Origin: Bugula neritina
Lineage: Eukaryota > Animalia > Bryozoa
Assembly (NCBI GenBank): GCA_964035545.1
Contig: OZ037767.1
Span: 14,698,998-14,762,997, forward strand
Length of the DNA stretch: 64,000 nt
Direction of reading: 5' to 3'
Below, in pieces: positions 23,915-47,900 of the stretch. Under the pieces are notes generated by a model. It did no database searches. It was not told the origin of the DNA and was given only the letters and a program-made list of their open reading frames with translations. Made by a program: the position numbers and the translations under genes. How positions within the stretch are numbered: the first letter of the stretch is position 1; every line of letters starts with the position of its first letter.

Positions 23915-26900
23915 ATGAAGTGCTTGCTAGAGATTGAAGGGAAATGGAAGACCTCCGGAACAAATGAGAACTCCTCATGTAAGTTTTTCCTGGTAGCAGA
24001 CAAGCTTCTGCAAATGTGATTATATTCCTGTAAACCAGGGCTGTCCAACAGGCGGCCCCAGCGCCAGATGTGGCTCCCAGCCTACATTTATTCGGCCCTT
24101 GAAAGCATAAAGCTAAAATTATTTTTCACAGTATACTTGAATTAAAGTGAAAAACCACCTTTTAAATGTCTTATTTCTACACATGCTGCAAAACATGCAG
24201 CCTGCAGCAACTATTCTGGCTTAGTAATGATTCATAAAAATTTAGAATAAAGTAAGTTGAAATATGCTGATGCTGTGCCCCCCCCCCAGCTCAAACTAAA
24301 GTTTAAAATGTGGCCCTCGTTACCAGAATATTCCCTTTTAGTGGCCATCGGTATGAAAAGCTTGGACATCCCTGCTGTAAACAGCCAGAGTGAAACCAAA
24401 ACTCAGTTCATTGGGTATTCTCTAGAAAGGAAGTCATATAAGTCTCTAGTATTTTTCATGATAGGACTTGGAATATCTGGTTGAATTCTCTATTATGCCT
24501 TTGTAGAATAATCTCCAATCACCATGACACTTCTACTACTAAGTTTTTACTAAAGGAAATCGCTGAGTTATATGTAATAAACTACCAGCATAGTTGTATC
24601 AATGGAGAGACAACCCCAAAGTTTGTAGAATATAAGCTGTGGGATTGAATCTTTTTTTTAAATTCATTGGCATAACTTGCAACAAACGTCAGTTTGCATT
24701 TTACTCCCCTAGAATGTTCTATTGGTTCTAATTATTTCACTGATTTGTTTTCAACTACAACACTGTAATTGCATCTTAAGTAATTGAAGCTTGAATTAGT
24801 TTAACTTCTGAGAGCTAGCTGAAATTCTTTTAATTTTCTGACGTTTGAAGCACCCATATTTACCTCATTTAGAGGGAGTTATATTTACCTTATTCTGTTG
24901 CAATCCTATTTACCTCATTCTGATGCAACAATCACCGGCTTTCCATGGATCAATCTCAGTGAGATCGATCCATGGAGAGCCTGTGAATGTATATCTTAAC
25001 AGAAAGCACTTATATTTACTTTGTTATGCTGCCCCTATAAAGACGAAATATGGTAAAGCCTCACCCAAAGCAATCATTTCTCTTCAGATTCCAGCAAGTC
25101 TGCCTGGACTAATGGTTCAGTAAGACTTGTAAGGTCGGCTGCCTGTGGCCTGAAATGGCAGCTGAATGTTCGAGAAAAGCTCAGCAGGATCCGATCAGTC
25201 AAGAGATATTCTGTGAGTGAAGCTAACAGTTTCTGTTTTCAGTATCAGAGTTATGTTGTGACTCTCACTGTGAGTCTGTATTGTGAACTCTACTACACAC
25301 AAGCACGCAAACTTTAGGGGAAGTCCTTATACACAGTGCTAACTCCAATTGCTTATATGCATGGCTGAGCTAAAATTGAAATATGGCCACATTCTAGCTA
25401 ATTTTTGTTTTTCTTACGATACCATCTTTTGTTAACTGCATTGTAGCATGCGATGAGGGCCAGTACGATTCAACAAATTTTAGTTATGTATTTATTATAT
25501 TATGTTGAGAGTTCATATTTATCATGTTATTAGATAATATTAATCTAATATTTATTATATTTATTAAGATGTGACTATTTCAGAGTTATTGTATTTATTA
25601 GAATGTGTTGCTATTTCATATTATATTAATATAATATGTTACTATTTCATATTATATTAATATAATATGTTGCTATTTCATATTATATTAATATAATATG
25701 TTACTATTTCATATTTGTTAGAATATTAGAATATTTATTAAGATATGCTACTATTTTGTTTTGTAAGTTGAGTTATAATAGTAAGTATTGAAGACTTTAT
25801 ACCAACTAAACTGTTACCAGTTTCTTGTGCTAGCTGCTAAGATAAAAGAATGTTGTTTTGTGTACATGCAGATAAACTTAAAGTAATTTACTAGAAAGTT
25901 TTTATTCATGTCTAAAAAGTGGACCACTATTTTGTACTAATTTCTATTTAATTAAAAGCATCCAATAGAGTCTAAATGAAATTATTTGAACTGCTAAGAA
26001 TTTGTTTGTTATCTGTATTTTAAGAATCTATTTAACTTTCACATAGCTCTACCAAGAATCAGTAACAATTATATTATGTAACTACTGTAGTACAAGCTGG
26101 TAATTATGTGAACAAAGCCATGTCCTTTGAACAAAGGTTGCTGGTCTAGTTTGACACATGTTTTAGGCTGGTTCTTGAAACCCTGTAATTATTGCCATGG
26201 CTTTCCCTCAAAATTGATTTTAAACTGCTTTGAAATGCCCTTCAGTTATTGTTTGAGACAAGCAAGGAATTTGTATCTGAAGAACTTACTCATGGGTATT
26301 TCTGATTAAGAAAGTGTTGGACAGAGTCTATTCTGCCTGCAGGCAAACCCCACGGATAGAATAGAATGTTTTGGAGACCAGGTGAAGCTGTGTGTCAAGA
26401 CCAACAGTGGAATCTTCTATCTCATGCTGGCCGAGACATCGCAGAAAAAGAGATCTGATATTGTGCAGAAAGCTAAGACCACTCTGGGATTGCTCTCTTA
26501 CACTGAACCAGGTGGTTATATTATATTATGTTATTTAAGGTGTGCTGTCTATTCAAATACTTTTATACTTTCTTTTTATGCTTCAAATGCCTTTTTCAAC
26601 ATGAAAGAACCTGACAGTTTACCTTTATGTTTAAATTAGAGTTTTACGCTCTCTAAAACTAGTTCCAATGATATATGAGATTCATCAGAGTTGCTATTGA
26701 AAAGCTATTCCTAGTAGGACTCTTTACCATGGAATTTGTGTTTATATAATATTTCCTTCCTTGCTGGTTTCAAGATATTTTGAAACCTTCTAATGTTGGA
26801 GAAATTACTAGATTTTAAAAAATGCCCTGTGGTAATTGACAACATAGCCTTTCTAGACTTAATTTCCTACTTGATTTTCATATAATATATTAAGCTTTGA

Positions 26901-29900
26901 GCATAAAGGCATAAAATGATGAGAGATTTGTGAGCATTTAGTACAAGCTTTAATAAAAGTAACTTTACATTCTGCATATCTGTCAACTTCTGTTATCTAA
27001 AAAACACTCTAGTATTTTCTGTAAATATTAATAAATTATTTTGAGCCACTATTGCCTGTGTTAATAAACAGATTCCATATAATCCTACAAAACCGATAGT
27101 AGAATATTGGCATATTGCCAAAATAAATAAATAAATATAAATAAAATATATAAAATAAACAAACAAAATAAATATTCATCCAAGTCTACTTCACAATTAT
27201 TGTACCACCTAAACCTTTGCAACGCTCATAAATACTGCAGACGCTATCGGCTGCGAGTTATCCTGTTAACTTAGCTAAGGAATATTAACAATCTATATAT
27301 TTTCTCTCACTCTTTTGACTAGGCTCAGAGAAAATGAACTCCGAGGAAGTTGTTGACTTGCTAATATCAGATGAGGAAGATGTTGATACAAGTAAGACTT
27401 TAAAATTATGAACAGTTTATCTTAATTCTATTTATGAGCCCACTTTTGAGCTTTCATTACTGTTGACTTTGGTATAACATAATTACAAAAACATATATAG
27501 AACAAACAATGAGTATCACAAAATTGCCAATGTATAAAATTTAAACAGGTAATCAAATTCACAGAAGCAGAAATGTTTATAGCCAACTGCCAGTTATGCA
27601 TGCCGTCGTTTCCGAAATCCAGAAAGTTTTATGATCGCCATCTTGTTTAAACAGATTTCGTAGCTTGGGTGCTGAGGATGGTCGCCAAAAATTACTTTTA
27701 AAGCGTTTGCTGCAAGCCAGAGCTGATTGCATGACTCCCCTAGTCGGTGGGAATGCTCCAGGGCTATTGCTTTTTTCATGTAGCAGCTTACAATGTTTAT
27801 ATGAGCCTTGCTAGCGTAGATCTCGTGGTAGATTTGGAGTGCAGTGTCGATGTGCTTTAAAGAAACACCATAGTTATTTCGAGTCATCTCATCGATAGCC
27901 AGGCTTTTGTAGTAATCAGCTATTTGAGGGTGCATTGGTGTGTTCCCGTATAATTTGTTCAACATTGCTAGCGAGGAAACAAAGTACATTTGTCTTTCGG
28001 TGTGCTCCATCTCTCCATGTCCCATGCTTACTGGTAGTTTGTGATAGATAGCAGCTATTTCGCTATGGTCACTGTCACCGTAAATCCTCAGGTACATGTC
28101 TAATGCTTGTTTATAGCATACTGATGCCTCTCTCTGTTTATTCATGTCCATCAGGTTGTCTGCAATATTATGCAGAGCTATGGCTATGTCTTGATGATCC
28201 GAATGTTGTCCGTGAATTACCATCCGGATCTCAAGTGTCCTCCGAAGGAAGTCATCAGCTCTTTCGTATTCTCCTTTACGGTTGTAAGTGTTGCCGATGT
28301 TATTGTAGCAGTGCGCTATATGGGGATGATTGGAGTCTCTACCATATAACTCTATCAGCATTATCCTGGACTTCTCGTGGTATTGCTCAGCTTCCCAATA
28401 CCTGCCCCAGTCGCTGTAGTTTCTCGCCACAAAGTTGTAGGTTCTCGCTAGTTCTGGATGAGGTTGTTCGCCAAAGTTTGTGAGAAACATGCGGATTGCT
28501 ACCTGGTGATACCTTAAGGCCTCGGGATACTTGGCTATGTATCTTAAGCTGCAAGCCATGTGATTGTATGCAGTTAGTGTCTTTATAGCACTTTCGCTGT
28601 TTGTCAAAGCACATATCCTGGCACAAGCTGCCAATGACAGCTCATGTTTACCAAGTTTGTAGTTGCAATACCCAATAATATCTAAAAGCTCAACATCCTC
28701 TAAAAATGTAAAAGTTGCATCAGAAATGTCTGTTCCTGGTAGAGATTCGTATGCATGCAGGCAATGCTCCCATTGATGGCAATAAGCATATGGTATCAAC
28801 TTTATATACAAAGAGGTGTTCATTGTAACTTGAGAAAACTTTTCTCGGTAGTTGAAGGTATTAGCATCCGACAGTTTTACTGCAACCAGCTCTTTGAATG
28901 GAATAAGATAGCCACACGACATTTGAAATATTTGCAGTGGAAAGTCGAATGACTTATGTGTACCCGCACATTTCTGGCCGAGTAAAGTTGTCTGCTCTTC
29001 TTGCTTGTTATAGTACAAATACGTAGCAAGCCGCGCATATAATGACACCGATATGAGCACTTTGAGGGCATGCCTAGCTGGCTCTGCCCATAGGAGCAAG
29101 GTCCCTAATTTGTCACTGGCTTTCCATACATTGGTCTCGTGTATTTCGAAGAGAATTTTCAAGCTGTTGGTCACAAGTGTTGGGTACCTATAAATATCAT
29201 CTTTCACTTTCAGCCATCCCGACTGGTCCCTGAAGTTTCTTGGGGTGTATTTGTAGCGTTCTGAATCTTGCTTCATCATGGATAGAGTTTTTTCTACTCT
29301 CTTTTCGTTTATCACCAGTTTTGAAGCACCTTCTTGGAATTTCTCCAACAAGCTTCCTTTACTTTTATAAATTGACACTAAATTGTAGAGCATTTGTGAA
29401 ATGTCTGAACCAATCAGTGTGCTTTCCTCTTCAACACTGCTCTCATATACTCTTCTATAGTTTTCTAACAGTGCTAATGGAGTTAATATAAGTTTTTTGC
29501 TGTTTTCTAGCCCATTTCCTGTGGGTATATTGCCAGAATTCTTAGTTATGCCATCAAATTTAAACCCGTTTGATTGGTGGTCTTGAAAAGGTGTTGTCCC
29601 AGTTTTCAAATCTTGAATGTTGAAACATTTCAGGTTGGTTTCGCCCAGATCATTTATCAAAAGATAAATAAAAATAGACAGGTTGACAAAGTAAGGACTC
29701 TTTGTGTCTGTTTCTACCAAAAGTAGAAATTCTAGATCAGAAAATGGAGTCATCTCACCCCTAGCTATAGACCCCATGGCGACAACTTCGAATTCACAAG
29801 GTGGTTTGCCCATTACACTTATTGCATTGCTAACCAAATGATGGCAAAATTCTATCATTTTAGAGTTGCAATCGCCTGTAATGGTTTGCATTTCTTTACA

Positions 29901-32900
29901 GAACTGAATCTCTTGTTCCAGTGGAATAGGTTTTATTGTCTCACCATTCATGCTTCTAGTTATGGGTTTCAAGCTCTTATCCAACTCTTTTCGTATCTGG
30001 CCTAGCTCTTTCAAGTGGCTGTCTCTAAGTTCATGGTGCTGTTTCAGCGTATAATCTTTAATGCCAGCCCTTTTCAGAAACTCTCTCTCAATCTGGTAGA
30101 TTTTGGTGGTTCTCTGTCTTAAATTTCCATTTTGTCTCACTTTGCATGAGTTGAAGATCCCATGTGCCTGCAAAATAAGTTAGTTTTATGAAAGTTTTCA
30201 ACTTTGTTGGTAAAAGAATTTCACTTTTTGCTTCTGATACATTTTTATTTCCAGCTGTTCCATTTGTTTTAGTTTTTATTGATACCAGGCTAGATGCACT
30301 ACTAAGTTAGAGCTACATGGTTTACTGGCAATGCTTTGCTTAGAGTGGAGACAATTTGCATCATTATTTATAATCTTATAAAACAAATGTTGTGTTCTAT
30401 CATTGGGTTGTTTAATTCAACACTCCAGTAGTTTCTTTGTTTTAAGACTTCAATTCTTGAGCAACATAAACTCCCATTCTTGTTGGTTCGCTAATAGCAT
30501 TGCCATTAATACAGGAAACAAAAACTCAATCATGTAGAGTAACTGTGAACACTTTCTATTTTTATTTTGTTAATACTCAATATACTATAATTAAATAGGG
30601 CACTCTACATTAGTAACAGATTAAATTAAATGAAAACTTTAACAAGTAATTAATTTTTTTGTAAAAATTTGTCCTTGAAGTCTAAAACCATATTCATCCT
30701 CTCTAACGAAAACAGGAAATGGTTTTGGTAAACTGGAGATAGTAACCTTACCTTCACTATGTCAGTCCAATGTTTGACTTTCTTTGCTGCATAAACATCA
30801 CCAATTTCTGTAAAACATTTCAGTACTTAGTTTTAGCGATCAAAGTTGGAGTTTGGAGTGTTAAACCTGCTAATATAACTTTCATTTCTTATAAATAATT
30901 AATTACCACTTATTTCCAGTTTACTCACAATGCAGATTCATATTTTTATATCTTCAATCATAATAACATACAAGTGTTTAAAGCTTTAACTTATTCATTG
31001 CTCCATAGGTTGTATGTTATAAAAATAAATTATTTAAGCTTGGAAAAGTACTAAATAAAATAATTACCTTCAAGATATCGAAGTTCCCTGTTAAGATTCA
31101 TTTTACTTGCTTCTCACCTCATTAACAAGTAAATTGTGAACGGACAACCTTTTACCTCACATCTATTTAATACCATCTTTTTCCATTGCTAAACTTCAAA
31201 ATTCTGACATTGCTTTCGTGTTTTATATTCCAGATACGTCAAGTTGGAATATCCAAGCTTAAGTCATGTAGAGGTTTTACAATACTAAGCAAACATTTAT
31301 TGTTCTCTAATTATTACTGGGCATTTATTAACTGCTGACTAGTTGTTATGCAAATTAAATATACTTGTTTTCAACGCAGTTGCTCAACCGTCTTGCAGCT
31401 TTATTTTAGTTGTAAAAATATATGTGGAAATTATTTATTAAAATTTCATTAGTATATTTTTCTTCATTTTAAATTTTTGGTGTAATTTTAGCAGAGATTG
31501 TGGACCTTTTCCCCTATTTTAATAGTTCATTGCTTTTTCTTGCATCAGCTATGTTCCATCAACTCTGGGAATTTCCATTTCAATTTCTCTGCATGGAGCT
31601 GGCCTTGTATTCCTATTCATAGTCATTTTCTGTTATTTTCTTTGGTCCGTTAAGCAATTATTACGTACCCTATTCAGATTGTTGAAAGAAATACGAATCA
31701 ATGACTCAATTCTCCTCAGTTTATCCATTAAACAAAAGCTTTGCCTCTTGTAATTTATATCCCATGAATACATATTGCTTCTATTCTTATAAGTGACATG
31801 CTCGAGTTAATTTTTGCACACCTGGAATATTTATTGCATAATGCTTATTCACCTAAATTACTCCTGGTAAGTTTTGGAGCTACCCAACTTATAAGGAAAT
31901 GAAAAAAAATAATGTGATTATTGAAAATTAGAAACTATTTCTCTTTAGCAATAGCATGTAAATAGTATAAATTCTGATATAAAGACCAGCCAAACCACTG
32001 TTTCTTGAAAAAAAAATTAAATAAGTTGAAGCAAACTTGTTTTTCGAGTCTGTTTTTACATCTATCTAGAAGGTTCAAAAACAGAATACCATAATTTGTC
32101 TGATTATTGTTAGATACATACAGATATATAGATAGAAACAGTAGCTGATGTCAATACTGGTGAGTTAAAATGTCTCTTGCTAGGCAGTTGTCTTCTCATG
32201 GTAGCTTGATGTAAATAGATTCTAATTGAAACAATGTAGGTGAGACATCGTCATGCGTTCAGGTGAAGAAGTTAAACTCCAGCTCCAACTGGCTGGAAGC
32301 GCATGATGAGTGGAAAGACATGATATCTCAGACTACACCTAGTAAAAGCAGAGACAGCGTGTCTCAGACTACACCCAGTGGGGGCAGGCAGCGTCTGCAG
32401 ACAGCAAGGTTAGTACTGCTTCATATTTAAACCTTTGAATTATCCGGAGATGTGACAAGTATTCTATACTCATGTCATAGCTACTGTAGACAATGCAACT
32501 GTAGACAATGCAACTGTAGACAATGAACTGTTGACAATTTAACTGTAGACAATGTAGCTGTAGTCACTGTAACTGTAGACACTGTAACTGTAGACAATGT
32601 AACTGTTGACAATGTAAATATTTAGATTGTGTTGTCTTCTATATTCCAGATCTGACCCACCAAAGTCTTTCTACAGCTCAAAGACCTCTTCCACAGCTCC
32701 CTTTGGCTCCAACTTCCTGAGACCAAGTTCTGCTTCTAAGTTAGTGTCAAGGGGCGCAATGACAACCCCCAAACTTTCTCTCTCAGGAGTTCTCCCCAAT
32801 AAGGTTGGTTTTTATCTTCAGACATTTCTTGATGTTTCTGTTCAGAATTCTTGAAAATGTAATTTCTAATAGCTTCAATCTGTTGTCTGCTTAACTATTT

Positions 32901-35900
32901 GAAAAAGAGGCTAGTTTTTCAGCAGGCCAGGAAATAATTCACTAATTCTCAAGAAAGCTGGCCATTTGAGTAAGTTGGCAAGATTTTTGGGGGTTTCCCT
33001 TCTCTGGCACTTTTTGTGTAGCCTTTTCAGTGTAAATGGCCAATACAGGAGAAGACAACTTATGAGAGAATAGCTTTAGTGGCCCAAGTGCTACAGGCTA
33101 CATCTGAAGGGCTGTAGTCTGTAACACTACTTTGTAGCCTCGGTAACTAACTCTAAGCTGTTATACTGTGAGGGGAGGGGGTGGCTCGTTACCATAATGG
33201 ATTATTTGTGTGTTTTGTAGCCTCAAGCGTCAGCAGATGTCGACACGAAGTCTTCTAAGGATGACGATGTCGGTTCTGACTCGGAGAATGTGACGTTAAT
33301 GCCCCGTCCCTCTCTTTCTGGGTTCGTAGTGGTGCAAGGCTATTCTATAGTATTACACATCTTTATACATTCTAGTAGTCAGTATTATTATCGTATGCTC
33401 TATTCTTATTCCCCCTGTGATTGGCTCACTGCTTCAGTGCCATTAGCATAATATATAAACAAGAAGCAGTTCTACCCTTGTGGCAATTTTACTTTTACTC
33501 TTTGTTAATATATTAACTGTTTACACTCCTTTCCCCCTAACAGTATCTAAGCTGCCTACGCTCCTGCTCCCTTTACAGTATTTAAACTCTTTACACCCCT
33601 GCCCCTCTAACACTGTATACACCCCTGCTCCCCTAACAGTATTTAAACTGTCTACACTCGTGTGTTGTGTTGCAGATTCTACAATCTAGGTAACACCTGC
33701 TACAAGAACGTCGCTCTGCAGTCTCTGCTCAATATCGATGTGTTTGCTGCGGACCTGCTCTTCTCGTATAAAACTTACGAATCTGACTTGGAGGAGCAGA
33801 GTTTGATCAGGTGACCTAGACTATCCTAGTTGTATGCTATATCCTCTTGTGTTATATACTATCCTCTTGTGTTATATACTATCCTCTTGTGTTATATACT
33901 ATCCTCTTGTGTTATATACTATCCTCTTGTGTTATACACTATCCTCTTGTGTTATACACTATCCTCTTGTGTTATATACTATCCTCTTGTGTTATATACT
34001 ATCCTCTTGTGTTATATACTATCCTCTTGTGTTATATACTATCCTCTTGTGTTATATACTATCCTCTTGTGTTATATACTATCCTCTTGTGTTATACACT
34101 ATCCTCTTGTGTTATACACTATCCTCTTGTGTTATATACTATCCTCTTGTGTTATATACTATCCTCTTGTGTTATATACTATCCTCTTGTGTTATATACT
34201 ATCCTCTTGTGTTATATACTATCCTCTTGTGTTATATACTATCCTCTTGTGTTATATACTATCCTCTTGTGTTATATACTATCCTCTTGTGTTATATACT
34301 ATTCTCTTGTGTTATATACTATCCTCTTGTGTTATATACTATCCTCTTGTGTTATATACTATCCTCTTGTGTTATATACTATCCTCTTGTGTTATATACT
34401 ATACTCTTGTGTTATGATGTGTTATACTTTATAGTGTGTTGTGTTATGTTTCAGTGTGTTACTATGGTATTGCAGGTGCCTCAACGAACTGGCTATCTGC
34501 AAGAGAGAGAACCGGATGCTGTCTGTCCAGAAACAGAAGGACCTCCTTAGAGATGTGTCTCAGGCCGTGGCAGCGTACACTGACAGATACTCAGATTGCC
34601 GGCAGCATGTAAGTCGGCTATGTCTCACTCAGATATTCTGTACTTACACATGTATATCCTGTACTTACACATGTATATCCTGTACTTACACACATGTATA
34701 TCCTGTACTTACACACATGTAAATCCTGTACTTACACACATGTAAATCCTGTACTTACACACATGTACATCCTGTACTCACACACATGTACATCCTGTAC
34801 TCACACACATGTACATCCTGTACTCACACATGTATATCCTGTACTTACACACATGTATATCCTGTACTCACACATGTACATGCAATTACACACACATACT
34901 CATAATATTCTACTTAATGTTACAGGACGCACATGAGTTCTTCTGCGAAGTTTTGAATATTCTCAAAGAGGAGATAATTTCTTATGGAGAGAAGAGAATA
35001 AGGAAAAACTCTGGGAAAAAAGCTGAGAGTGTTAATGCTGCTGTGGACAACTTTGAATTTGAGGTGCTTAAATCTTAGTATATACCTGTGTTAGTATATA
35101 CCTTTGTCAGCTGAGATTTTATTGGATCGTATGATAAGACTAAGCTTAAAATATAAATTTGGAATGCATTTATAACTTCATAAAAGTTGTCTGATTTTTT
35201 GCTCCGTTTCCCATAGAGTAGTTTGTGCGAGTATTCTATTGGGAAACCCTTGAACTATTCTATAAGATATATATTGACTCCCAGCAATGTATTTCTGCTG
35301 TACGTACAGGTGTCGACAACTCTCACTTGCACCAGCTGTTCAAGAGAGACCACCATTCGTGACAAGCAGAACGGCCTGACTGTCAGCATTCCTGAGGTGT
35401 TTCTGCAGGATACACCTTCCTGCACACAGTAAGTGTAACCCACATTTTTCTTCAAAAAAGTAGAATGTCAATTAGGCATAAATGGTACGTATAATCCACA
35501 AAGCACAATCTCTAATAATATAATATATGTTTCCAAATTATATAATTGGCGTTGATGTACTGCAGTAGACACTTTCATATATAGACTAATCAAGTTTAAT
35601 GTTTTCTTCAGAATTTGAGTTTTTAGGTTGTCTTCATAAAATATATTCTGCTTATCATACATAATCACTCTGACTCACCTGTCACTCGCTCTGACTCACC
35701 TGTCACTCACTCTGACTCGCCTGTCACTCACTCTGACTCGCCTGTCACTCACTCTGACTCGCCTGTCACTCACTCTGACTCGCCTGTCACTCACTCTGAC
35801 TCGCCTGTCACTCACTCTGACTCACCTGTCACTCACTCTGACTCACCTGTCACTCACTCTGACTCACCTGTCACTCACTCTGACTCATCTGTCACTCACT

Positions 35901-38900
35901 CTGACTCACCTGTCACTCACTCTGACTCATTTGTCACTTACTCACAATCTGTTTTGTTTACTTTTCTTACATGCTAGGATTAGGCCCCACTACTCACGGC
36001 ATTTCACTTATCAATATCTATGATGAGTCCTGCATTTACATTTTAATGAACCATTTTGATTGAGATGATGTCGATGTATCTTGTTAGCTGTATTTCAATA
36101 AAAGTATTAGTTCTATTTATGGGTATTTCGCGTATCTTACTAGAATCTAGTTGTTGTTGGTTAAACAGGAAGAAGAAACTAGATACGTATATACAGGACA
36201 CCATAAGCTGCTACTTCCAGCCTGAGGATATTGATTATTTGTGTGAAACTTGTGGGGCGCCCACAGCACGCTCCGTCCAGACCTTCTCTCGACTGCCAAG
36301 GTAGCTGTACAATCTAACCTCTTGTAGGTGTGATTGGTGCGTACTGTAACTCACCCATTTAAAATAACTTTCAAAGTTTTAAAATTTCTTCTTTTTTAAT
36401 GAAATCAGTTTTAATATTGAAATTCTTGAATATAAATATTGGGTCATGTATTGTGTTACCACTTTGTGAAGAAAATGTTTCGAGTCCACCACCGTTAGTA
36501 TTTGTATCTCTGGTGGGTGTGTCCAATGATTTTGTGTTCTAGTGCGACAGCAATTTTATATTTTTTATATGAAAAGACAACTCTTGTAAAAAGTGTTTTT
36601 ACAAAAGTTAGGAGTTTTCTTCTTTTTGGGACTAGCTCATGATGTTGAAAGAAATATTATGTATTTGAAAGTAAAAGCATTAATGGTGTTAACTCACGCA
36701 AGTTTATAGTCACCATCCTTGTGAGAAAACTCCTGATAGAAAGGGTTTTTGTTAATAGCGGGCTAAGGACTTATTCAGATGAGGCACAGGAGCAATTATG
36801 ACTGGATGCTCTTTCTAACATCACCAACGGCCTTTGTCCGAGCTCGAACCCATGACTTCGTGTTTACTAGGCAAACGCTCTAACTCCTAGACCACTGCTG
36901 CTTCTGGTGTTAAAATTGTTTATCAATTCTTTAAAATGTACTATAATAATAGTATGCAATAATACTAAGAAAGTTGCATTTTCTATAATTTGCACATATA
37001 GAGTAATAACAGTAAGCTCTTTTAAACTTTTTTATAGTCTATACAGCAACAAAGCTCTCTTATGAACTTCAATAGACTGCAATTACTTGTGTTATTGCTA
37101 CGTATGTACTTGGCTTTCAAGGAAAGACAAATCTCAATCATGCATAAAGACTACAATTTTTGTGAAGACTATATTTATTTTATGATGCAATTTATCGTTT
37201 TTCTAGATATTGTTGCATGTCACAATGACCTCTAAGCTATCGCTCCTTTCTATCTGCAGAGTTTTAGTGATAGTGCTGAAGAGGTTTCAGAACAAGGGGC
37301 GGATCACTAAAGACGCACAGAGTATCTATATTAATAAGTACATCAGCCTAGCCGGTCACTGCGGCAGCCAAGTACCACCTCTTATGCTGCCTAACATACC
37401 TATGTAAGTACATCTGTAAGTGTATAGTAAGTACCTCTGTAAGTGTATAGTAAGTACCTCTGTAAGTGTATAGTAAGTACCTCTGTAAGTGTATAGTGAG
37501 TACCTCTGTAAGTGTATAGTAAGTACCTCTGTAAGTGTATAGTAAGTACTTATGTGAGTGTATAGTAAGAACCTCTGTAAGTGTATAGGAAGTACCTCTG
37601 TAAGTGTATAGTAAGTATCTCTGTAAGTGTATAGTAAGTACCTCTGTAAGTGTATAGTAAGTACCTCTGTAAGTGTATAGGAAGTACATCTGTAAGTGTA
37701 TAGTAAGTACCTCTGTAAGTGTATAGTAAGTACCTCTGTAAGTGTATAGTAAGTACCTCTGTAAGTGTATAGTAAGTACCTCTGTAAGTGTATAGTAAGT
37801 ACCTCTGTAAGTGTATAGGAAGTACATCTGTAAGTGTATAGTAAGTACCTCTGTAAGTGTATAGTAAGTACCTCTGTAAGTGTATAGTAAGTACCTCTGT
37901 AAGTGTATAGTAAGTACCTCTGTAAGTGTATAGTAAGTACCTCTGTAAGTGTATAGTAAGTACCTCTGTAAGTGTATAGTAAGTACCTCTGTAAGTGTAT
38001 AGTAAGTACCTCTGTTAGTGTATAGTAAGTACCTCTGTAAGTGTATAGGAAGTACCTCTGTGAGTGTATAGTAAGTACCTCTGTAAGTGTATGGTGAGTA
38101 ACTCTGTAAGTGTATAGTAAGTACCTCTGTAAGTGTATAGTAAGTACCTCTGTAAGTGTATAGTAAGTACTTATGTGAGTGTATAGTAAGAACCTCTGTA
38201 AGTGTATAGGAAGTACCTCTGTAAGTGTATAGTAAGTATCTCTGTAAGTGTATAGTAAGTACCTCTGTAAGTGTATAGTAAGTACCTCTGTAAGTGTATA
38301 GGAAGTACATCTGTAAGTGTATAGTAAGTACCTCTGTAAGTGTATAGTAAGTACCTCTGTAAGTGTATAGTAAGTACCTCTGTAAGTGTATAGTAAGTAC
38401 CTCTGTGAGTGTATAGTAAGTACCTCTGTAAGTGTATAGTTAGTACCTCTGTAAGTGTATAGTAAGTACCTCTGTAAGTGTATAGTAAGTACCTCTGTAA
38501 GTGTATAGTAAGTACCTCTGTAAGTGTATAGTAAGTACCTCTGTAAGTGTATAGTTAGTACCTCTGTAAGTGTATAGTAGTATACAGTTAATAGTTGGTT
38601 CAAACATTTCGTCCAGCTAATTCCCAGTGTAACCTTTTTAGAATCATTCTGATTGGGAGTTGTCTTCTGGAATAAATTAGCTCATTTTACTTAGACTTTG
38701 TAACTCAGTAAGTGTGGTTAATTAAGTAGGGGAGACAATTCTGTATGAATTCTCCTATTACTATTTCCTTGGCATTACTGTTGTTGTTTATGGTCAGCGT
38801 CTGGCATTCTAACGTGAAGTTATGTCGTATTTTCAGCAAGCTCTGGTCAGTGGACGAATATCTGAAGCTCAAGAGCCAATCAGAGCAGGATAACACAACT

Positions 38901-41900
38901 CCTGGTAGAAATAGTGGCAGTCGTAATGCAAGTGTTGAAAAGATGAAAGATTACAGTGCTGAACCCATGAAATACTCTGCAAAAAAGCGGCTAATCATGG
39001 TAACCCATACCCTGGCAGATGTTCTGCTATACATTAGTATAATTCCTTGTTTTTCACGCTAATAATTTATTTTAACTGTTAAAGTGTGTTTGTTGTACAG
39101 CTCACCTTTATGGAAAATAGCCGGACTTTTAGGCTTCAGATTTATATAATGTCACAAATAGTGGCATACTGTAAATATATTAAATTACAAGGTGGGCTGA
39201 AAATAATCTGATAAAATAATTTCTAACACATTTATATCTCTAGGCAACGGGTTGGCCTGCATGCAAAATTGTTTTTGTGCTTTTCATGTTTGAAATTCAA
39301 TAAGTATTGTAATTCAGTTGAATGTGTAGGTCAGAATTGTGCAAGCAGAGGCCCTTGCACTACGTTCCCTGTTCCACTCTTAAATATGTCTGTATGCGCT
39401 AAATGCATCATCAATATTGTTGATGTGTGCCACAGTCAACAAAATACATTATAAATTCTGATACAGTACTTCGAGTACCCAAAATATCTGTTGGAAACCA
39501 TCTTGTACAAACCTACAATGAAGTCTTAGCACAATGATGCTGTTGAAAATTGATGCTGCAGGAGCAGGTTATTGAGTCTTCCTGGTTTCAGCAATAGTCT
39601 AAGTTCATATAGCGCTGCTAAGTTCGGAGTACCACCTATCTGTGTGGATAATGACGTGTTGGCATAAACACACTCAGGGTTGTTTTCGAGAAGCAAAGCA
39701 TTTTATTAGCTATGTACAAGTGGATGAGGCTAAATATAAGTATAAACATAAATTGAGAGGATGTGAGCTGAGATAATTATTTGTTCTTCTGTCAGCACCT
39801 CCCTCCATCACAAATAGGATGTGTAACAAGGCTAGGAGACAAGGGCACAGTGTTTGTACCTAATTGCACCCACTGTAAACCTATTGTGTTAGGGGTGTGC
39901 ATGCACACATGACTTGCTAATTGAAAACACAAGAGTGTGCACATCACAAGAAGTGCTGATTGAAGCAGTTTGCTAGATCTACAAAATATTCAGATCTATA
40001 AATTGGAAATCAGCTAGGTTATATAAAACATTCCTGCAGCTCAAGGTTTACACAGTGTACCTAATCTAAACCAGCACAGTGGTGTTATGAGGTTTGATAT
40101 AACGTACTTTGTTCATTACTGGTTGGATTGGAGGAGGAATTCTTCTCATAATTACATTAACTATTCTGTCTGTATTTCCAGCATAACTCATTAGAGCCAA
40201 GCTCTTGCAGCCAATGAGCATTTTGTAAACGTACATTGTCAGTAAACGTACGTTATTGGTAAATTTACACCTTGCACAATTAGTAAGCTTATGCAAATTT
40301 CAAAAATTATCAAAAATAATAAATAAAATGACTCAAAATCCTGAATTCTGAAAACATGACTCAAAATTTGTGAGTTTTCACACATAAATTTTTTAATTAC
40401 CACACGTGATCGGTTTTTGTGATTGGCAAAAACCGGCTATACAAAAGTTCAGCTAATGACTTTTACCACCAGTCTAGTGGTATTCATCTCCCGGATCTGC
40501 TCTGTAAACTGTGCTGTGAGTGCTGGTTGGCTCATCCCAGAAGGTATCCAGAGAATAGCGTGTAGTGAGCATAGAGGTAGTTAGGGGGGTTGTCGGAAGA
40601 TTTCTGTATGACGTTGACAGTGTCTCCTCTGTGTAGTTGCTGTATGGTCATGGCGGTGCCCATCTGTTCGCTGGATGACGAGTATCCACTCGCCCAGGCG
40701 TACGCCACCGGCTCGCCGTTCACCTAACCCGACACAAACTGGCTTTAGTTCAGCAAAAAGAAAGGTTTTAAGTGAATGGCTTCAAGTTTTTTTTTCTACA
40801 TTTTCGCTACTTGGATATAATGTGTCACTTGGAGCTGAGCCTTATAGTTAAAGCGTAAAAATGAATCTAAGCAAGACAGCATTTATACTGAAGGAAAGAT
40901 TTAAGTAAAGGTTTTGAAGTTCAGTTTTTTCTCCATTTTCGCTAGTTGGGTATGGCGTAGTATGTCACTCATAGCTGAAATTCAAGGAAAGGGGTCTAAG
41001 TAAGGCAGCATTCAAATACAAAGAATATGTAGTACCTTGATGGTCAACCAGGCTATGTGGTCTGCCATTGCCATCACTTGAAGGTGGAAGACATAGACTC
41101 CATCCACGTCTACAAGGAAGGAACCTGTGGCAGGGTCAAATCCTGACCCCAAGTTGAAATCCACTTGAGAAAACAGCACGTGTGTGGTAACAGTTGATGG
41201 TCCAAAATGGTCAGATAGTCTGGCTAGAAAAGCTACCTGAAAAGACAGTTTTACCAACATTAACTGGTGCAGGGTTTTCAAGCTTTAATGCAGCACCAGT
41301 TACTGTTGCATTCTCTGTTAATATATTATCCTGGTACCAATAAAACCAGCAATCGATATATTTAGCTCTAGCTTACTTTATCAGAGATTTTGCTGGGGAC
41401 TTCTACTGATTCTCCTGGAGGTCCTGGTTCTCCCGACTCTCCCTTTAACCCTGGTTTACCCGGCAAGCCTCTTTGGCCATCTAAACCTCTTTCTCCTCGC
41501 GAACCTCTTGCGCCCTCACTTCCTCTAGGTCCGGGTCTTCCTGTTTCACCCATCGGCCCCGGGGCACCCCGGTATCCCTGAAGGCCAACATTACCAGCAT
41601 ATCCTCTTGGCCCCTGGTCACCCTTTACACCTGTAAAGTAATTCAATGTGTATCTCGTACAGAGAAATATAGCTATAGTAATAAATATAGCTATAGTCAT
41701 ATGTGTATTGTACACAATATAATATAGCTATAGTAGTATGATTTATACCATATATGGTGTAATATATGTCAGCTTGACAACATTAGTTTAAGATACTAAA
41801 TACTAGAGTTTAATGGCTTCATACTAAATGTCTAGTTGTGGATAGAGTTGTTGCCAGCTAGTTTGTTAGACTTACCCTTTTCACCTCTGGGTCCTGGGGA

Positions 41901-44900
41901 ACCTTGTGAGCCGTCTAGACCAGGCTCTCCCTTTGCACCATCTATGCCGGGTTCTCCATTGTATCCAGGCTCACCCGTCAAACCTGGTTCGCCCTTTGAT
42001 CCCTTCTCGCCCACAGCTATCATACTGGGCTCCTTCTCTGTTAGAGGTTGAGCGTACAAGTCGTCATCAGACATTTCCAAGTCACTCAATATTTTGCTGT
42101 ATTTATCTATGTTGAGTGCCATGTCCTCTTCTCCTAGCCCTACTGTATCTCCTATGTAGCCAACACTCTCATCGTCAATGTAGCCTGAACCTTCTACTGC
42201 GGTCGTCATGTCAGGCATAGGGGTAGTTGTGTAAAAGCCCGCTGTTGTCCCTCTCTGTGCAGCTTCCACTATCTGTGCTCTCGGATCATCTTGTAATATT
42301 GATGGAGACTTGTCTGCTGAAATGGCTGCTGCAATGGAAAAGGAAATCATAAAATATTCATATAAGCTTTGAGATATCATTAAACTGGTGATAATACTTA
42401 CCTCGTTGTGTATAATGTTAGAGGTTGTGTGTGGCTACCATATCAGGTATAACCTCAGCATATCATGAAATGGAAACTGTGCCATTTTGCTACACCTTAT
42501 TATCACCATCTTTCCTAATAGCTGTCCAAATTGCACCAACTTGTATTTTCGAGGGCTTTTAAAATTTTTCTAATCTTAATATTATTTATATAATTCGAGT
42601 TTTGTAAATCTAAATACGTATTTTTAGTTAGCCAGCCTAGGCCTGTTCGCCTCACACGCAGTGAATTTTTCAACATAACCAATTGGTTTGAAGTAATCCT
42701 CTCACAAAACTTTTCAAATTTAAAAAATGAAAATTTCAACTTTGGCCCATGATTCACAACTGTAGTGTATGCTGTTAAATGAATTCTAAATAATAAAAAA
42801 AATTGCTGAAATTCTTGCGCAATACACTGTATGCCAATCTTTTTTAGACTTTAGACTTAAGACTTTAGATTATTTGGTTTCTTTAGCTTACCTTGTATTT
42901 TGATTGTATCCAAGGGGCAGGTACACTGACACTGTGTATGAATCACGCCGTACTCTAAGGCTAAAACTACACTCTCTGGTATTAATAAGCTTAAAATCAC
43001 GAGAGAAAAGTAGAGTCTCCAAGATATACTCTGTATCTTCATTTCCATTCTCTTGGTCTATTTTTACTCTGAGCTAAAATTTCTGAATGATTAATACACA
43101 AGCTCCCATTTCTACACATTTAGCACTTAGTTTACACACAGTTTACACACTGAATGCTCGCATAGGCAGCAGCGTGGCAGCATTGGCAGTAGCATCACTC
43201 ACCAATTACCTGCAGGTGTGCATTGAGTGCAAACATCTCATTAGATAGAATCTGTTTTAATGGAGTTTCAATTAGAAATGGTCAAAAATGAGGCAGACTT
43301 CAGCCGTGCCATATTTCACTGTTTATCTAGCTGCAGGGTGTCTTCTTAATTGTAAATATTTATCAACAATATGTTTACTGCTGCTGCTGCTGCTTACAAG
43401 TTCAATTATCTATTGAATAGTCAGCAGTTGAGCTGACATAGATGTTATATATTCAATGTTAACTACTCCTGTGCCCTGTAAAAGTAACGTTAGTAATATA
43501 GTTGAGGAAAACCTGTGTTTTAGATAAGAAATTTAACTAAAGAAGTTCAACCTGCTTTCCATACCAAAGTTCATAAACAGTTTGACAATTTGGGCTATTA
43601 CAATTTATGCACCTAAATTAATAAGCTGTAACTTTCACTACCTCATTCCCACAATGCTAGTAGCTAATGCTACAAGTTGTCATTATGAGAATCAGTAGTC
43701 TGGGGGAGGTTGGCATAGTCTGAGATTGTAACCCTGAGAGTGGTTGTGCGCACAAGTATAACCGGATAAAGCAGAATAGTGATACTAGGTGAAGCTTATT
43801 TCCAAATATATGTGAATAGTTTCAGGTTTTAGGGCTTTTTGGTAGTAGGAGGTATAATTTCTTCTTGATAGGTTTTGTTACATAGAAGAAACCCTTCATT
43901 TCGTAAATAACACAGTATCATAAAATCTCTAGAAGTTGACCTTTAGTTATATGATTACAACTTTTATATACTATGATAGTTTTTACTGGTTTATTATTTT
44001 ACAGGATGCACCAGTTGTTGAGTCTTTCACCAAATTCAAACCGGCCACAGTATTGCCCTCTCCTTCTGACCAATCAGACAGCATATTCACTGCACAAACT
44101 GACCAATCAGAGGGCGTATTTACTCCACAAGGTGACCAATCAGAGAGCATATTCACACAAATCGGGGCTACCAAGTCTGGCAGGTTGGTCACTGTTTTCT
44201 CTGTGATAAACCTTGTATTAAATTGCCATATCAGTGGTCAGTTGATTTGGTCACAGAAAACATTCAGTAGGTTATGAAATACAGGGATGAAGCAAAGGCA
44301 ATTGAATTTAAGAGTAAACAGGGTTATGAGATGAAACCTGAATATAACATGAGCCTTGGTTTGACACAATCATGACTTTTTTCTCAATTCCATTTTCACT
44401 ATTTCACAAAACTGTCTACACCGTGTATTATTGTGTCAGCTGTAAGAGAATCGTTCTCTGTTTTAGTAAATTTAGGTTCAACTCTCCTGCCATAAACAGC
44501 GGTAACCATGGCGATAAGATAGGTTCCAGCTTGTACAGGGCAACTCTGGAATCAAGTTTGCGGCAGCAAGGTGGGGGTCTATTAGCTCGTCTCATACTTT
44601 CTGTGTCACACAGGCTAAGTTATGTGGAAATTATAGTTTATTATTTTTCTATTCTATTTTTTTTCTATTTTATAATTTGATATTTTTTCTTTTAAATTAA
44701 TGTAGTATCTAATATAAAATGTTGATAAGCAATTAATTGATTTCTGGAGCTGTTTTTGTCTTCTTATATCAAATTTAGGCTTTTAATAAATTCTCTGGCA
44801 CGGCAAATATTATAAATTTTCTCTCAAACTGGTAGTATGTTTTCTTGGTGCAATGTAAGTCATGTAATTAGAAGTTGTCTCTCTCTGATTACTCACAGGG

Positions 44901-47900
44901 CAGAAGAAGCGGACGACGTCCACGAGCTCCGCACTCCTATTGGACAGCCTCTCCGAGGATGAGCAGTTTAATCTGGCCATTCAGCAGAGTTTAAAGGAAG
45001 TCGGGAGGGGCCAGTCGTTGTCCCCCCTGAAAGAGTCGGTAGATCCTGCGCAGTTCTCCCGCAATGTGCAGAGTAGCAAGTGGTCGCACTCAACTGAGGG
45101 GTTACGAGGGGGTCACCCCTACACCACTCCTCCTCGAGATTTGTCTTACCTTGTTAGTTCCTCTGACGAAGAAGCTGTTGGCACCATACAGTGTCGTGGT
45201 CGGCAGGTGGTTGCAGGTGAGTCATGTGACGCGCAGCAGACAGGAGATGAGTCATGGCATGTTGAACAGGAGTTGAATAGAAAATGTTCAAATGGACTTG
45301 TTGGCGGTAATCCTATTTGCCTCACTGACTCTCCACCCAGACTCGCCAACTCTCCTCTGCCATCACCCGTCTCCTCTCCTAGCCTCAGGTCTGGATCCCG
45401 TGGTGCAGACAGACAAGCACAAGCTTATAGCACCCTCAAGTCACCAGGCAAACGCAGTAGACTCTTAGCTAAAACTCGAGAGTCTATCAAACAGAAACAG
45501 TTTTTCTCCGATAGCGAAGATGAAGGTTCGGACAATTCGACTGCTTCTGCGTCGCGATATAAAAGACGTCGTCAACGAGACATAACTCCTGAAAGTACGC
45601 CCATTTCTTTTGGGTGTGAATTGGTAGATGAAGTCTCTCCGCAAAAGGCCAAGTATGATGAGCTGAGGCTAAACCAGCCCCTGGTAGTTGTCCCACCTAC
45701 ACAGCCGAGCTTAGAGTCATCTTCTCAGTCAGCTGGTGGACAACTCCACACTACTGTGCATACAGGAAGCAGACGGGGAAAGGCCGAGCATCAGTCGTCC
45801 AGTGAGACCGAGTTTGACGTAGTCTGGGTGAAATCTGAGGACACTCAGAAAGAGGAACGGCCCGCAGACCTGGGTGAGTACTTTAGGACGGCAGCAGCGC
45901 ATTTTGATGGGCTGACTATAACTACTTTTATTCTTATTCACGGCCAAGTTTTCTTGGGCATATTTTTATATTATCTGTATTTCTGACAAGCACTGCTCTG
46001 TTGGTTAATGGATACATCATGTGAATTAGACAGAATTTTGCTATAGCTCCTCCCACTTACTCGACCTTGACCTTAGTGTGGATTCCCCTGAGCACTCATT
46101 TCGAGTTGCGTCATCTTGCAGATGCCTTCTTCACGGATGAAGATGATAAAACCTGGGGAAGTCTCCCGGCACCGATGACCTCTGTAAGAGACAAGAATCA
46201 CGTAGACATCAAGGGAGCTGGCGATGTAGAGTCTCCTCATTATTCTGCTGATCAGTCTCTGCTCTCTCCGCCCACCTTAGTCGGCCTCCCTCCCAGGAGA
46301 CTAGAGTCCTGTGGAGCTGAGGCTAGTGACGGGACAGTCGGGAATCAGGGAGGATCTTCTGAAGGTTAGTCTGCTGAATACATGGGGCAGGTGATCCCCC
46401 CTCTTCCAGTATTTGTTACCATCCACTTCCGGTTGCTGTCTGTATTCACCACTATTTCCCTCTGTCTGTATCCACCACTATTTCCCCCTGTCTGTATCCA
46501 CCACTATTTCTCCCCTGTCTGCATCCACCACTAGTTTCCCCCCTTCTGTATCCACCACTAGTTTCCCCCCTTCTGTATTCACCACTAGTTCCCCCCTGTC
46601 ATTATCCACCACTAGTTGCTGCTGTCTGTAGGCGAAGACAAGGAGAACCAAAGACCTGACTCCCCTAAGACCCCGCTGCCAGCCGACAACGCTGCCTCTC
46701 CCGAACCCTACCAGCCTACAGTCGTGAAGACCTCTCGGGAAGTGAGGGGCATGGAAAGACACGAGAAAGTAAGCCTTCAATCTTTCTGTCTGTCTGTTTG
46801 TCTGTATATAGACTCTACTGTACATCCTTTCTAGCCTTGGGTCTCACGTCTCCCATATCCTTGTAGGACGGGACAGAGTTTGGATACTCGTATAAACTCG
46901 TTGGCGTAGTCAGCCATATTGGTTCTGAATCTTCACATGGTAAGTTATCTTCCCTCAATTAGCAATACTGTTGGGGGGCAACTCCTAATAGCAATGCTAT
47001 CTCAGCTGAAGGCTAATGTCCTTCCTTATATCTGGCTGCTATTACACTCTACACTCTAAGGTGTAACTGTACTATGTTATGGTTCATTTCCTGTAATTGA
47101 TTAAATTGGAGCCAGTTCAAACTGGAGCTGACTTCAAACTTTGAACTTTTAAACCAGCTCAGTGATTAAACTGTGTGCGGCAGCAGCTAAAAATAGCATG
47201 CAAGAAGGTCAGCTGATATTACTATTAGTTTATAACTAACATTAGCATGAGTTCAGAATTTGTTGTAAAACATGATTTTGGTCATACAACCCTCTAACAG
47301 CATGTAGATGGTAGCTCAGATATAAGTATGAATATTTGAATACTGCATGGATGAAGTGGGATTCTCTAAGTGCAACACATAAGCTATATGCTAGCTCTGA
47401 GATTGTTATACCACATTACGCAATAGTGTGTATCAGATGTGAGTGTAGTACACAGCGGCTCTGGGAATGTACAGTTAGTGATTCCTAGCGTGTTTGTCAG
47501 CTGATTCACTGTAACTCCTCCCAGAGTGTTTATCTCTAATAATCCTCTCAGCTGCACTCATTAGCTTTCGTTTGTTTCTGACGGATTATCCACTTCTTAC
47601 TCAGTCTGGAAATATTTGGAAAGTTTCCAAAGACTCTGTTTTCACTGAGTTGTGGCAGTTGTGTATTTGGTGAGAGATCCTATAAGTCCCGTGTGTTTGT
47701 TTATTAGGATGTGTTGAAAGCAACTGCCCAAGTGAATGTAGGACATTGAAAGTATTTTTTATTATCTTTTATAAGTGTAAAAATCACACAAAACACACTC
47801 AAAACACACACACACTATGCACACACTACGCACACACTACGTGCACACTGCACACTATTACACTGATTATGTAATACTAATTACTAATAGTAATAAGCTC

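What the first reader, a model, noticed from the sequence alone, without database searches (positions are those of the whole stretch)
27594..31101. Nested nucleotidyltransferase-TPR gene: candidate sensor-plus-enzyme signalling or immune protein
Seen: an ~887-aa antisense gene inside a USP37 intron. It has an intact Pol-beta-superfamily motif ([17 protein letters not shown], ~29777-29727), a possible third acidic residue in GFKFDG (~29567-29550), a helical region ([26 protein letters not shown]), and then roughly 7-8 TPRs of the 42-44-aa kinesin-light-chain type. Established: GSxxRxExxxxSDxE is the signature of bacterial GlnD/GlnE/DUF294-type nucleotidyltransferases that modify proteins; Pol-beta-fold enzymes also include cGAS/OAS; this TPR type is the sensor module of many NLR-like proteins. 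Inference: the TPR array may bind a ligand or target and gate an NMP-transfer or second-messenger activity. I know of no characterised animal pathway with this architecture.
Basis: partly seen in the sequence, partly recalled or inferred. Interest (0 to 1): 0.9.

Follow-up and report, generated by a model that had tools for sequence, protein, structure and literature searches.

The report
Animal DrrA-like AMPylase with TPR sensor
This is a real, conserved bryozoan-type gene for an enzyme built like the protein-AMPylating domain of the Legionella effector DrrA joined to a repeat binding module, and it belongs to an apparently undescribed family with dozens to hundreds of copies in bryozoans and lancelets, many of whose repeats diversify like immune receptors.

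Summary
Observation confirmed: a three-exon, 887-aa antisense gene in an intron of a USP37-like gene, under purifying selection (dN/dS 0.19). The AlphaFold model (pLDDT 93) matches the whole AMPylase domain of Legionella DrrA/SidM (Z 24), then GlnE; no cGAS/OAS among the top 50. Putative metal ligands D174, E176 and D235 are 98-99% conserved. The genome holds at least 60 copies; lancelets hold hundreds; Watersipora and Owenia have it. Bacterial kin are nearly all intracellular symbionts, including the Neochlamydia NEX2 effector family (F-box/OTU-DUF294-TPR, published 2014). Many paralogs carry up to 31 near-identical TPRs whose groove codons vary 5-7 times more than silent sites, as in fungal NLRs. 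This copy differs: it is a single-copy ortholog with conserved repeats. Best reading: a TPR-targeted or TPR-gated protein NMP-transferase, probably an AMPylase, in a defence-type family shared with endosymbionts. Activity, substrate and expression are untested; no RNA run was available. I found no paper on the animal family. The scan had flagged other copies of this family elsewhere in this genome.

The parts
31068..31101 (-). Exon 1 (34 nt, ATG start); with exon 2 it encodes an N-terminal TPR-like hairpin
   Evidence: Donor kept and 22/23 nt identical in ortholog L021; peptide resembles the hairpin in front of the enzyme in bacterial and lancelet homologs. No RNA evidence.
30752..30807 (-). 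Exon 2 (56 nt)
   Evidence: 96% identical in L021 against 87-89% for introns; a 56-nt exon with similar peptide and the same donor in the distant ortholog L089; similar exon ends in many paralogs.
27594..30167 (-). Exon 3 (2574 nt, 857 aa plus stop): the enzyme and the TPR array
   Evidence: Open frame; dN/dS 0.19 and no indels against L021; phase-0 acceptor shared with paralogs and matching annotated Watersipora protein P0016.
29811..30167 (-). N-terminal helical bundle, corresponding to the DrrA N-terminal helices
   Evidence: Model helices 2-119; structural alignment to DrrA 6yx5_B starts at model residue 1.
29358..29810 (-). Pol-beta-type nucleotidyltransferase core (DUF294/DrrA-like)
   Evidence: Pfam DUF294; profile hit to DrrA E 2e-8; structure Z 24.3.
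29730..29774 (-). GS-x10-D-x-E catalytic motif (G162, S163, D174, E176 in the 887-aa protein)
   Evidence: 99% conserved in 142 homologs and present in all 20 fetched paralogs; aligns with DrrA G98, S99, D110, D112 (PMC7815794).
29553..29555 (-). Third acidic residue D235, inferred equivalent of DrrA D150
   Evidence: 98% conserved, next to a beta-bridge in the model.
28938..29327 (-). C-terminal helical domain of the enzyme (HEPN-like, DUF294_C/GlnE type), without the RNase motif
   Evidence: Matches DrrA 209-331 and HEPN domains; no R-x(3-6)-H motif; K352, R357 and R409 conserved at 93-97%.
28599..28937 (-). Linker helix and short helical hairpins
   Evidence: Full-length model.
27597..28598 (-). 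Seven 44-aa KLC/LGN-type TPRs plus capping helix; degenerate among themselves, groove residues of repeats 2-4 kept in orthologs
   Evidence: (18% mutual identity); dN/dS 0.25 for linker plus TPR.
25088..46938 (+). Host USP gene (USP37-like; span of the exons looked at, not the gene ends). The finding lies in the intron that starts at 27392 and ends near 32.1-32.2 kb
   Evidence: Exons read from sequence; UCH Cys box E 3.8e-7; UIM E 1e-3 and His box E 0.11.

Best explanation
The gene encodes a cytosolic protein NMP-transferase of the DrrA/GlnE class, most likely an AMPylase. D174, E176 and D235 hold Mg2+, ATP binds between the core and the HEPN-like helical domain, and AMP is moved onto a side chain of a target protein. 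The TPR solenoid binds a peptide ligand in its groove and either delivers the substrate or switches the enzyme on, as Rab1 binding does for DrrA. The enzyme-TPR module is shared with effectors of intracellular bacteria and has been in animals a long time. In bryozoans and lancelets it expanded into a defence-type receptor family with variable repeats; this copy is an old single-copy member with a fixed ligand. Shown: gene, fold, conserved acids, family size, tree, repeat diversification in paralogs. Inferred: activity, nucleotide, gating, target, role.
For: Fold: DrrA 6yx5_B is the best match by profile (E 2e-8), Foldseek (E 2.4e-8) and VIA-align (Z 24.3, 303 residues); the next two are GlnE domains (Z 21.3, 20.0). 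The three best structural relatives all move AMP on or off proteins (PMC7815794 and established knowledge). Acids 98-99% conserved; dN/dS 0.19. Full-length model pTM 0.88, which suggests a fixed enzyme-TPR arrangement. TPR folds match peptide-binding APPBP2, LGN and KLC. At least 60 copies here; top 120 of 867 hits to a lancelet query are all Branchiostoma. Bacterial kin are mainly Rickettsiales, Holosporales, Chlamydiae and Amoebophilaceae-like Bacteroidota, often multicopy, 36 of 48 with downstream TPRs; P0154 is a Neochlamydia F-box protein, and tested NEX2 members carry a type III secretion signal (PMC4209131). Paralog repeats: codon 13 diversity 0.5-0.7 at positions 1-2 against 0.10 at fourfold sites, in two clades.
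Against: No biochemical or expression data. Identity to DrrA is only 12-13%, and the same fold family also modifies antibiotics (ANT) and makes oligonucleotide signals (HalB), though these score far lower (Z 6-9). DUF294 itself has no known activity. This copy's repeats are conserved, so a variable-sensor role does not apply to it directly. Triad geometry was not measured. Repeat diversity counts are not independent and can be inflated by unequal crossing-over.
Confidence: 0.6

Rival explanations
1. Sensor-gated synthase of a nucleotide second messenger (works like cGAS/OAS or HalB).
For: Pol-beta superfamily; sensor-plus-enzyme layout; HalB appears weakly (Z 6.3); family evolves like immune genes.
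Against: No cGAS/OAS/Mab-21 in the top 50; whole-domain match is to protein-modifying enzymes at Z 20-24.
Confidence: 0.12
2. This copy is a domesticated housekeeping or developmental protein-modifying enzyme with one host substrate (for example a small GTPase or trafficking factor) and no role in defence.
For: Single-copy orthogroup with P0001, P0002, P0019 (support 98/96, 100); conserved groove residues; dN/dS 0.19-0.25; not in a tandem cluster.
Against: Orthologs are only 31-53% identical by domain; the family is patchy in animals and expanded in tandem. This rival shares the chemistry of the best explanation and differs only in role.
Confidence: 0.2
3. Non-AMP protein transferase (UMP or other NMP, GlnD-like) or a reverse, de-modifying enzyme like the GlnE N-terminal domain.
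For: Weak GlnD hits over the motif (E 1e-4); GlnE N-terminal adenylyl-removing domain is the second-best fold (Z 21.3).
Against: DrrA scores best in all three searches; no GlnD HD or ACT domains.
Confidence: 0.1
4. Bacterial contamination, recent horizontal transfer, retrocopy or pseudogene.
For: One 2.6-kb exon; bacterial relatives; no RNA support.
Against: Sits inside an animal gene on a contig of at least 14.7 Mb with even read depth; introns shared with orthologs and paralogs; purifying selection; bryozoan-type clade 100/100.
Confidence: 0.02

Closest known systems
Legionella DrrA/SidM AMPylation domain (PDB 6YX5, 3NKU)
   Same: Whole three-part fold (helical bundle, Pol-beta core, HEPN-like domain), GS and DxD/E motif, likely third acid.
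   Different: 12-13% identity; DxE not DxD; no GEF or P4M domain; TPR array instead; encoded by the animal with introns; substrate unknown.
Neochlamydia NEX2 family (PMC4209131) and kin in Rickettsiales, Holosporales, Amoebophilaceae
   Same: Direct homologs (P0154, E 2e-24); DUF294 followed by TPRs; large expansions.
   Different: No F-box or OTU domain in this gene (Owenia P0140 has an OTU); a host gene, not an injected effector; NEX2 was not linked to DrrA or to animals in the passages of that paper read here.
GlnE (GS adenylyltransferase) / GlnD / DUF294+DUF294_C
   Same: Fold of core plus helical domain (Z 20-21); Pfam DUF294 above cut-off.
   Different: No tandem AR/AT layout, HD, ACT, CBS or cNMP domains; far below NCBIfam cut-offs; TPR fusion.
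Fungal NLRs with high-internal-conservation TPRs (PMC13449251)
   Same: Paralogs have near-identical tandem TPRs, variable copy number and a few hypervariable positions.
   Different: No NACHT or NB-ARC switch; the enzyme is joined straight to the repeats; this copy has low internal conservation.
FICD/HYPE (animal TPR-directed AMPylase)
   Same: TPRs next to an AMP-transferase; the title of PMC8065156 states that its TPRs give substrate specificity.
   Different: Fic fold, ER lumen, two TPRs, single conserved gene (own knowledge); unrelated enzyme.
cGAS/OAS/cGLR
   Same: Pol-beta superfamily acids.
   Different: Different fold class; not among the top 50 structural matches.

Membership tests
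Pol-beta nucleotidyltransferase, DUF294/GlnE/DrrA class | GS then DxD/E motif | tested here: met
   G162 S163 D174 E176, 99% conserved
Pol-beta nucleotidyltransferase, DUF294/GlnE/DrrA class | Core followed by inactive HEPN-like helical domain | tested here: met
   no RNase motif
Pol-beta nucleotidyltransferase, DUF294/GlnE/DrrA class | Third acid converging on the metal site | tested here: inconclusive
   D235 98% conserved and plausibly placed; coordinates not available
DrrA/SidM effector | AMPylase plus GEF plus P4M domains; Pfam SidM_N cut-off | tested here: not met
   SidM_N 19 bits against cut-off 27; no GEF or P4M. Works like it, is not it.
DrrA/SidM effector | AMPylation of Rab1 | not testable with these tools
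   Needs assay
Neochlamydia NEX2-like DUF294-TPR | DUF294 with C-terminal TPRs and sequence homology | tested here: met
Neochlamydia NEX2-like DUF294-TPR | N-terminal F-box or OTU domain | tested here: not met
   None in exon 3; exons 1-2 encode only 30 aa
GlnD / GlnE | Curated equivalog score and accessory domains | tested here: not met
   20 bits against 519
cGAS/OAS/Mab-21 | Mab-21/OAS fold | tested here: not met
   No Pfam hit; absent from top 50
NLR (STAND receptor) | NACHT or NB-ARC domain | tested here: not met
   No hit
NLR-like variable sensor | Internally conserved repeats with hypervariable positions | tested here: inconclusive
   Met in paralogs, not met in this copy

The most novel reading that the evidence does not exclude
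Bryozoans and lancelets use a class of intracellular immune or allorecognition receptors in which a diversifying TPR array directly controls a DrrA-like protein AMPylase with no STAND switch, an enzyme module taken from or shared with the effectors of intracellular bacteria; this gene is a conserved member of that system.
Probability: 0.3. Interest if true: 0.9.

Novelty: new variant of a known kind. Interest (0 to 1): 0.75.

Why it matters
To my knowledge the AMP-transferases described in animals are FICD and SelO; DrrA/GlnE-type enzymes are regarded as bacterial. A large animal family of this class would add a third type. Its paralogs show receptor-like diversification, which gives testable candidates for pathogen sensing or allorecognition in colonial bryozoans and in lancelets. 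It also links DrrA, so far a structural loner among effectors, to a large TPR-bearing family in endosymbionts and offers a likely activity for the uncharacterised DUF294-TPR proteins.

Tried and rejected
RNA evidence: no RNA run holds the stretch; the one run laid gave unspliced contigs with no joints; L021 is also unspliced. Single-sequence PDB search found only a weak DrrA hit (E 1.4); the profile was needed. No relatives in viral contigs. PADLOC hits are motif-only. Conserved nesting could not be shown: no USP exons in the flanks of orthologous loci L022 and L089, which are short. Host N-terminal exons gave no family hit. The mixture-model tree did not finish; one search used LG+G4 and has no root, so the direction of transfer is not settled. 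Ten literature searches found no paper on the animal family; the library lacks most subscription journals.
Full report
Observation. The window holds an 859-aa open frame at 27594-30173 on the minus strand. Pfam finds DUF294 above its cut-off, NTP_transf_2, a weak SidM_N and TPR_10/12. The gene lies in an intron of a plus-strand USP gene with a UCH Cys box, an inserted UIM and a His box; that layout fits USP37 (own knowledge), but orthology was not tested.

Is it a real gene? A close relative (L021, 90% nucleotide identity) keeps all splice sites, has 96% identity in the small exons against 87-89% in introns, no indels in exon 3 and dN/dS 0.19. A distant ortholog (L089) has a 56-nt exon 2 with a similar peptide. 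Paralogs share the phase-0 intron in front of the large exon, the annotated Watersipora protein P0016 reads across the same point, and the exon 1-2 peptide resembles the hairpin that precedes the enzyme in bacterial and lancelet homologs. There is no transcript evidence: no RNA run was found and the one run laid is unspliced.

What the enzyme is. A profile of 142 homologs hits the DrrA/SidM AMPylation domain best (E 2e-8), over both the motif and the helical domain. The AlphaFold model of the first 423 residues of exon 3 is confident (pLDDT 93, pTM 0.93). It matches DrrA 6yx5_B along its whole length (Foldseek E 2.4e-8; Z 24.3, 303 residues, rmsd 3.8), then the two GlnE domains (Z 21.3 and 20.0); antibiotic transferases, HEPN domains and HalB follow at Z under 9, and cGAS/OAS do not appear in the top 50. 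DrrA uses G98-S99, D110, D112 and D150 (PMC7815794). Here G162, S163, D174 and E176 align with the first four, and D235 is the likely third acid; all are 98-99% conserved. The helical domain lacks the HEPN RNase motif, as in GlnE and DrrA (PMC3710099). The full exon-3 model has pTM 0.88, which suggests that the TPR solenoid sits in a defined place on the enzyme; I could not inspect coordinates. The TPRs resemble the peptide-binding solenoids of APPBP2, LGN and kinesin light chain.

The family. The genome gives 65 matches to the enzyme region, about 60 of them near full length, mostly in tandem clusters on C2, C5, C6 and C7 and only 29-35% identical to this gene. All 20 fetched keep the motif. 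The wider search gives 1457 representatives at E 0.001 or better. Named animal hits are Watersipora, Branchiostoma and Owenia; a lancelet query returns 867 proteins, the top 120 all Branchiostoma, often auto-named PII-uridylyltransferase N-terminal domain protein. Bacterial kin in GTDB are nearly all from intracellular lineages: Rickettsiaceae, Holosporaceae, Chlamydiae, Amoebophilaceae and related Bacteroidota, often in several copies, and 36 of 48 show downstream TPRs within the fetched DNA. The scan pattern (TPYSD[LI]E) selects for close kin, so this is not a census of DUF294. One hit is a Neochlamydia TUME1 F-box protein, matching NEX2, a 50-member F-box/OTU-DUF294-TPR family whose tested members carry a type III secretion signal (PMC4209131). 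In a 58-row IQ-TREE tree the bryozoan-type sequences form one group (100/100), join Owenia (99/82), and all named animal sequences lie on one side of a branch with moderate support (85/82); the nearest outsider P0129 is bacterial. This fits one old presence in bilaterians with many losses, but the tree is unrooted and several gains are not excluded.

Two modes of evolution. Many paralogs have long arrays of 44-aa TPRs, up to 31 copies with up to 95% identity within a gene. Among 134 distinct near-consensus repeats, positions 6, 13, 16, 17 and 35 have pN 1.9-3.4 times the mean pS; position 13 shows 16 codons for 16 different amino acids. Its first two bases vary at 0.5-0.7 while its third base varies at 0.02-0.05 and fourfold sites at 0.10, in two separate clades. 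Positions 6, 13, 16 and 17 lie on helix A, which lines the binding groove in this TPR type (own knowledge). The pattern parallels the internally conserved, hypervariable repeats of fungal NLRs (PMC13449251). Pairs are not independent and recombination may contribute, so this is a strong hint, not a formal test. The gene in this window is different: single copy, in an orthogroup with P0001, P0002 and P0019, with seven degenerate repeats (18% mutual identity), dN/dS 0.25 and conserved groove residues in repeats 2-4.

How it most likely works. A cytosolic, Mg-dependent transfer of NMP, probably AMP, to a protein, aimed or switched by the TPR groove (0.6). For the variable paralogs a receptor role in defence or allorecognition is the natural reading; for this copy a fixed ligand is more likely, either as a conserved partner in the same system or as a domesticated regulator (0.2). 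Second-messenger synthesis (0.12) and another nucleotide or reverse chemistry (0.1) remain open. Contamination or pseudogene is close to excluded.

Novelty. The enzyme class is known (DrrA, GlnE) and the bacterial DUF294-TPR architecture is published (NEX2). Ten searches found no paper on the animal family, its link to DrrA, or its repeat diversification, within a library that lacks most subscription journals. I file it as a new variant of a known kind. Earlier first-stage notes flagged other copies in this genome; they are not independent evidence. The joined spliced protein was not searched or folded, by instruction.

Noticed in passing
window 40560-42900 (-): A second antisense gene nested in another intron of the same USP gene; its exon at 41832-42380 hits Collagen (E 2e-9).
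   Followed up: partly
P0020, P0021, P0022, P0025, P0055, P0090, P0140: Homologs with two or three tandem enzyme modules in one protein, in lancelets, Owenia and bacteria.
   Followed up: no
P0140 (Owenia fusiformis): OTU + DUF294 + TPR, the same domain set as ten Neochlamydia NEX2 members (PMC4209131).
   Followed up: partly
ESM Atlas cluster: A 292-aa DUF294 cluster with mainly ciliate members matches residues 1-286 of the model (TM 0.75 by the match): possible protist branch.
   Followed up: no
G000:C2:24502645-24503844 (L023), C6:404287-405474 (L039), C2:32553633-32554583, C5:15116890-15117591, C5:16121031-16121759: Paralogs with short or interrupted frames: birth-and-death turnover, further introns or assembly errors.
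   Followed up: no
window 33820-34410, 35670-35940, 37410-38580: Long simple tandem repeats in introns of the USP gene produce spurious ORFs.
   Followed up: no
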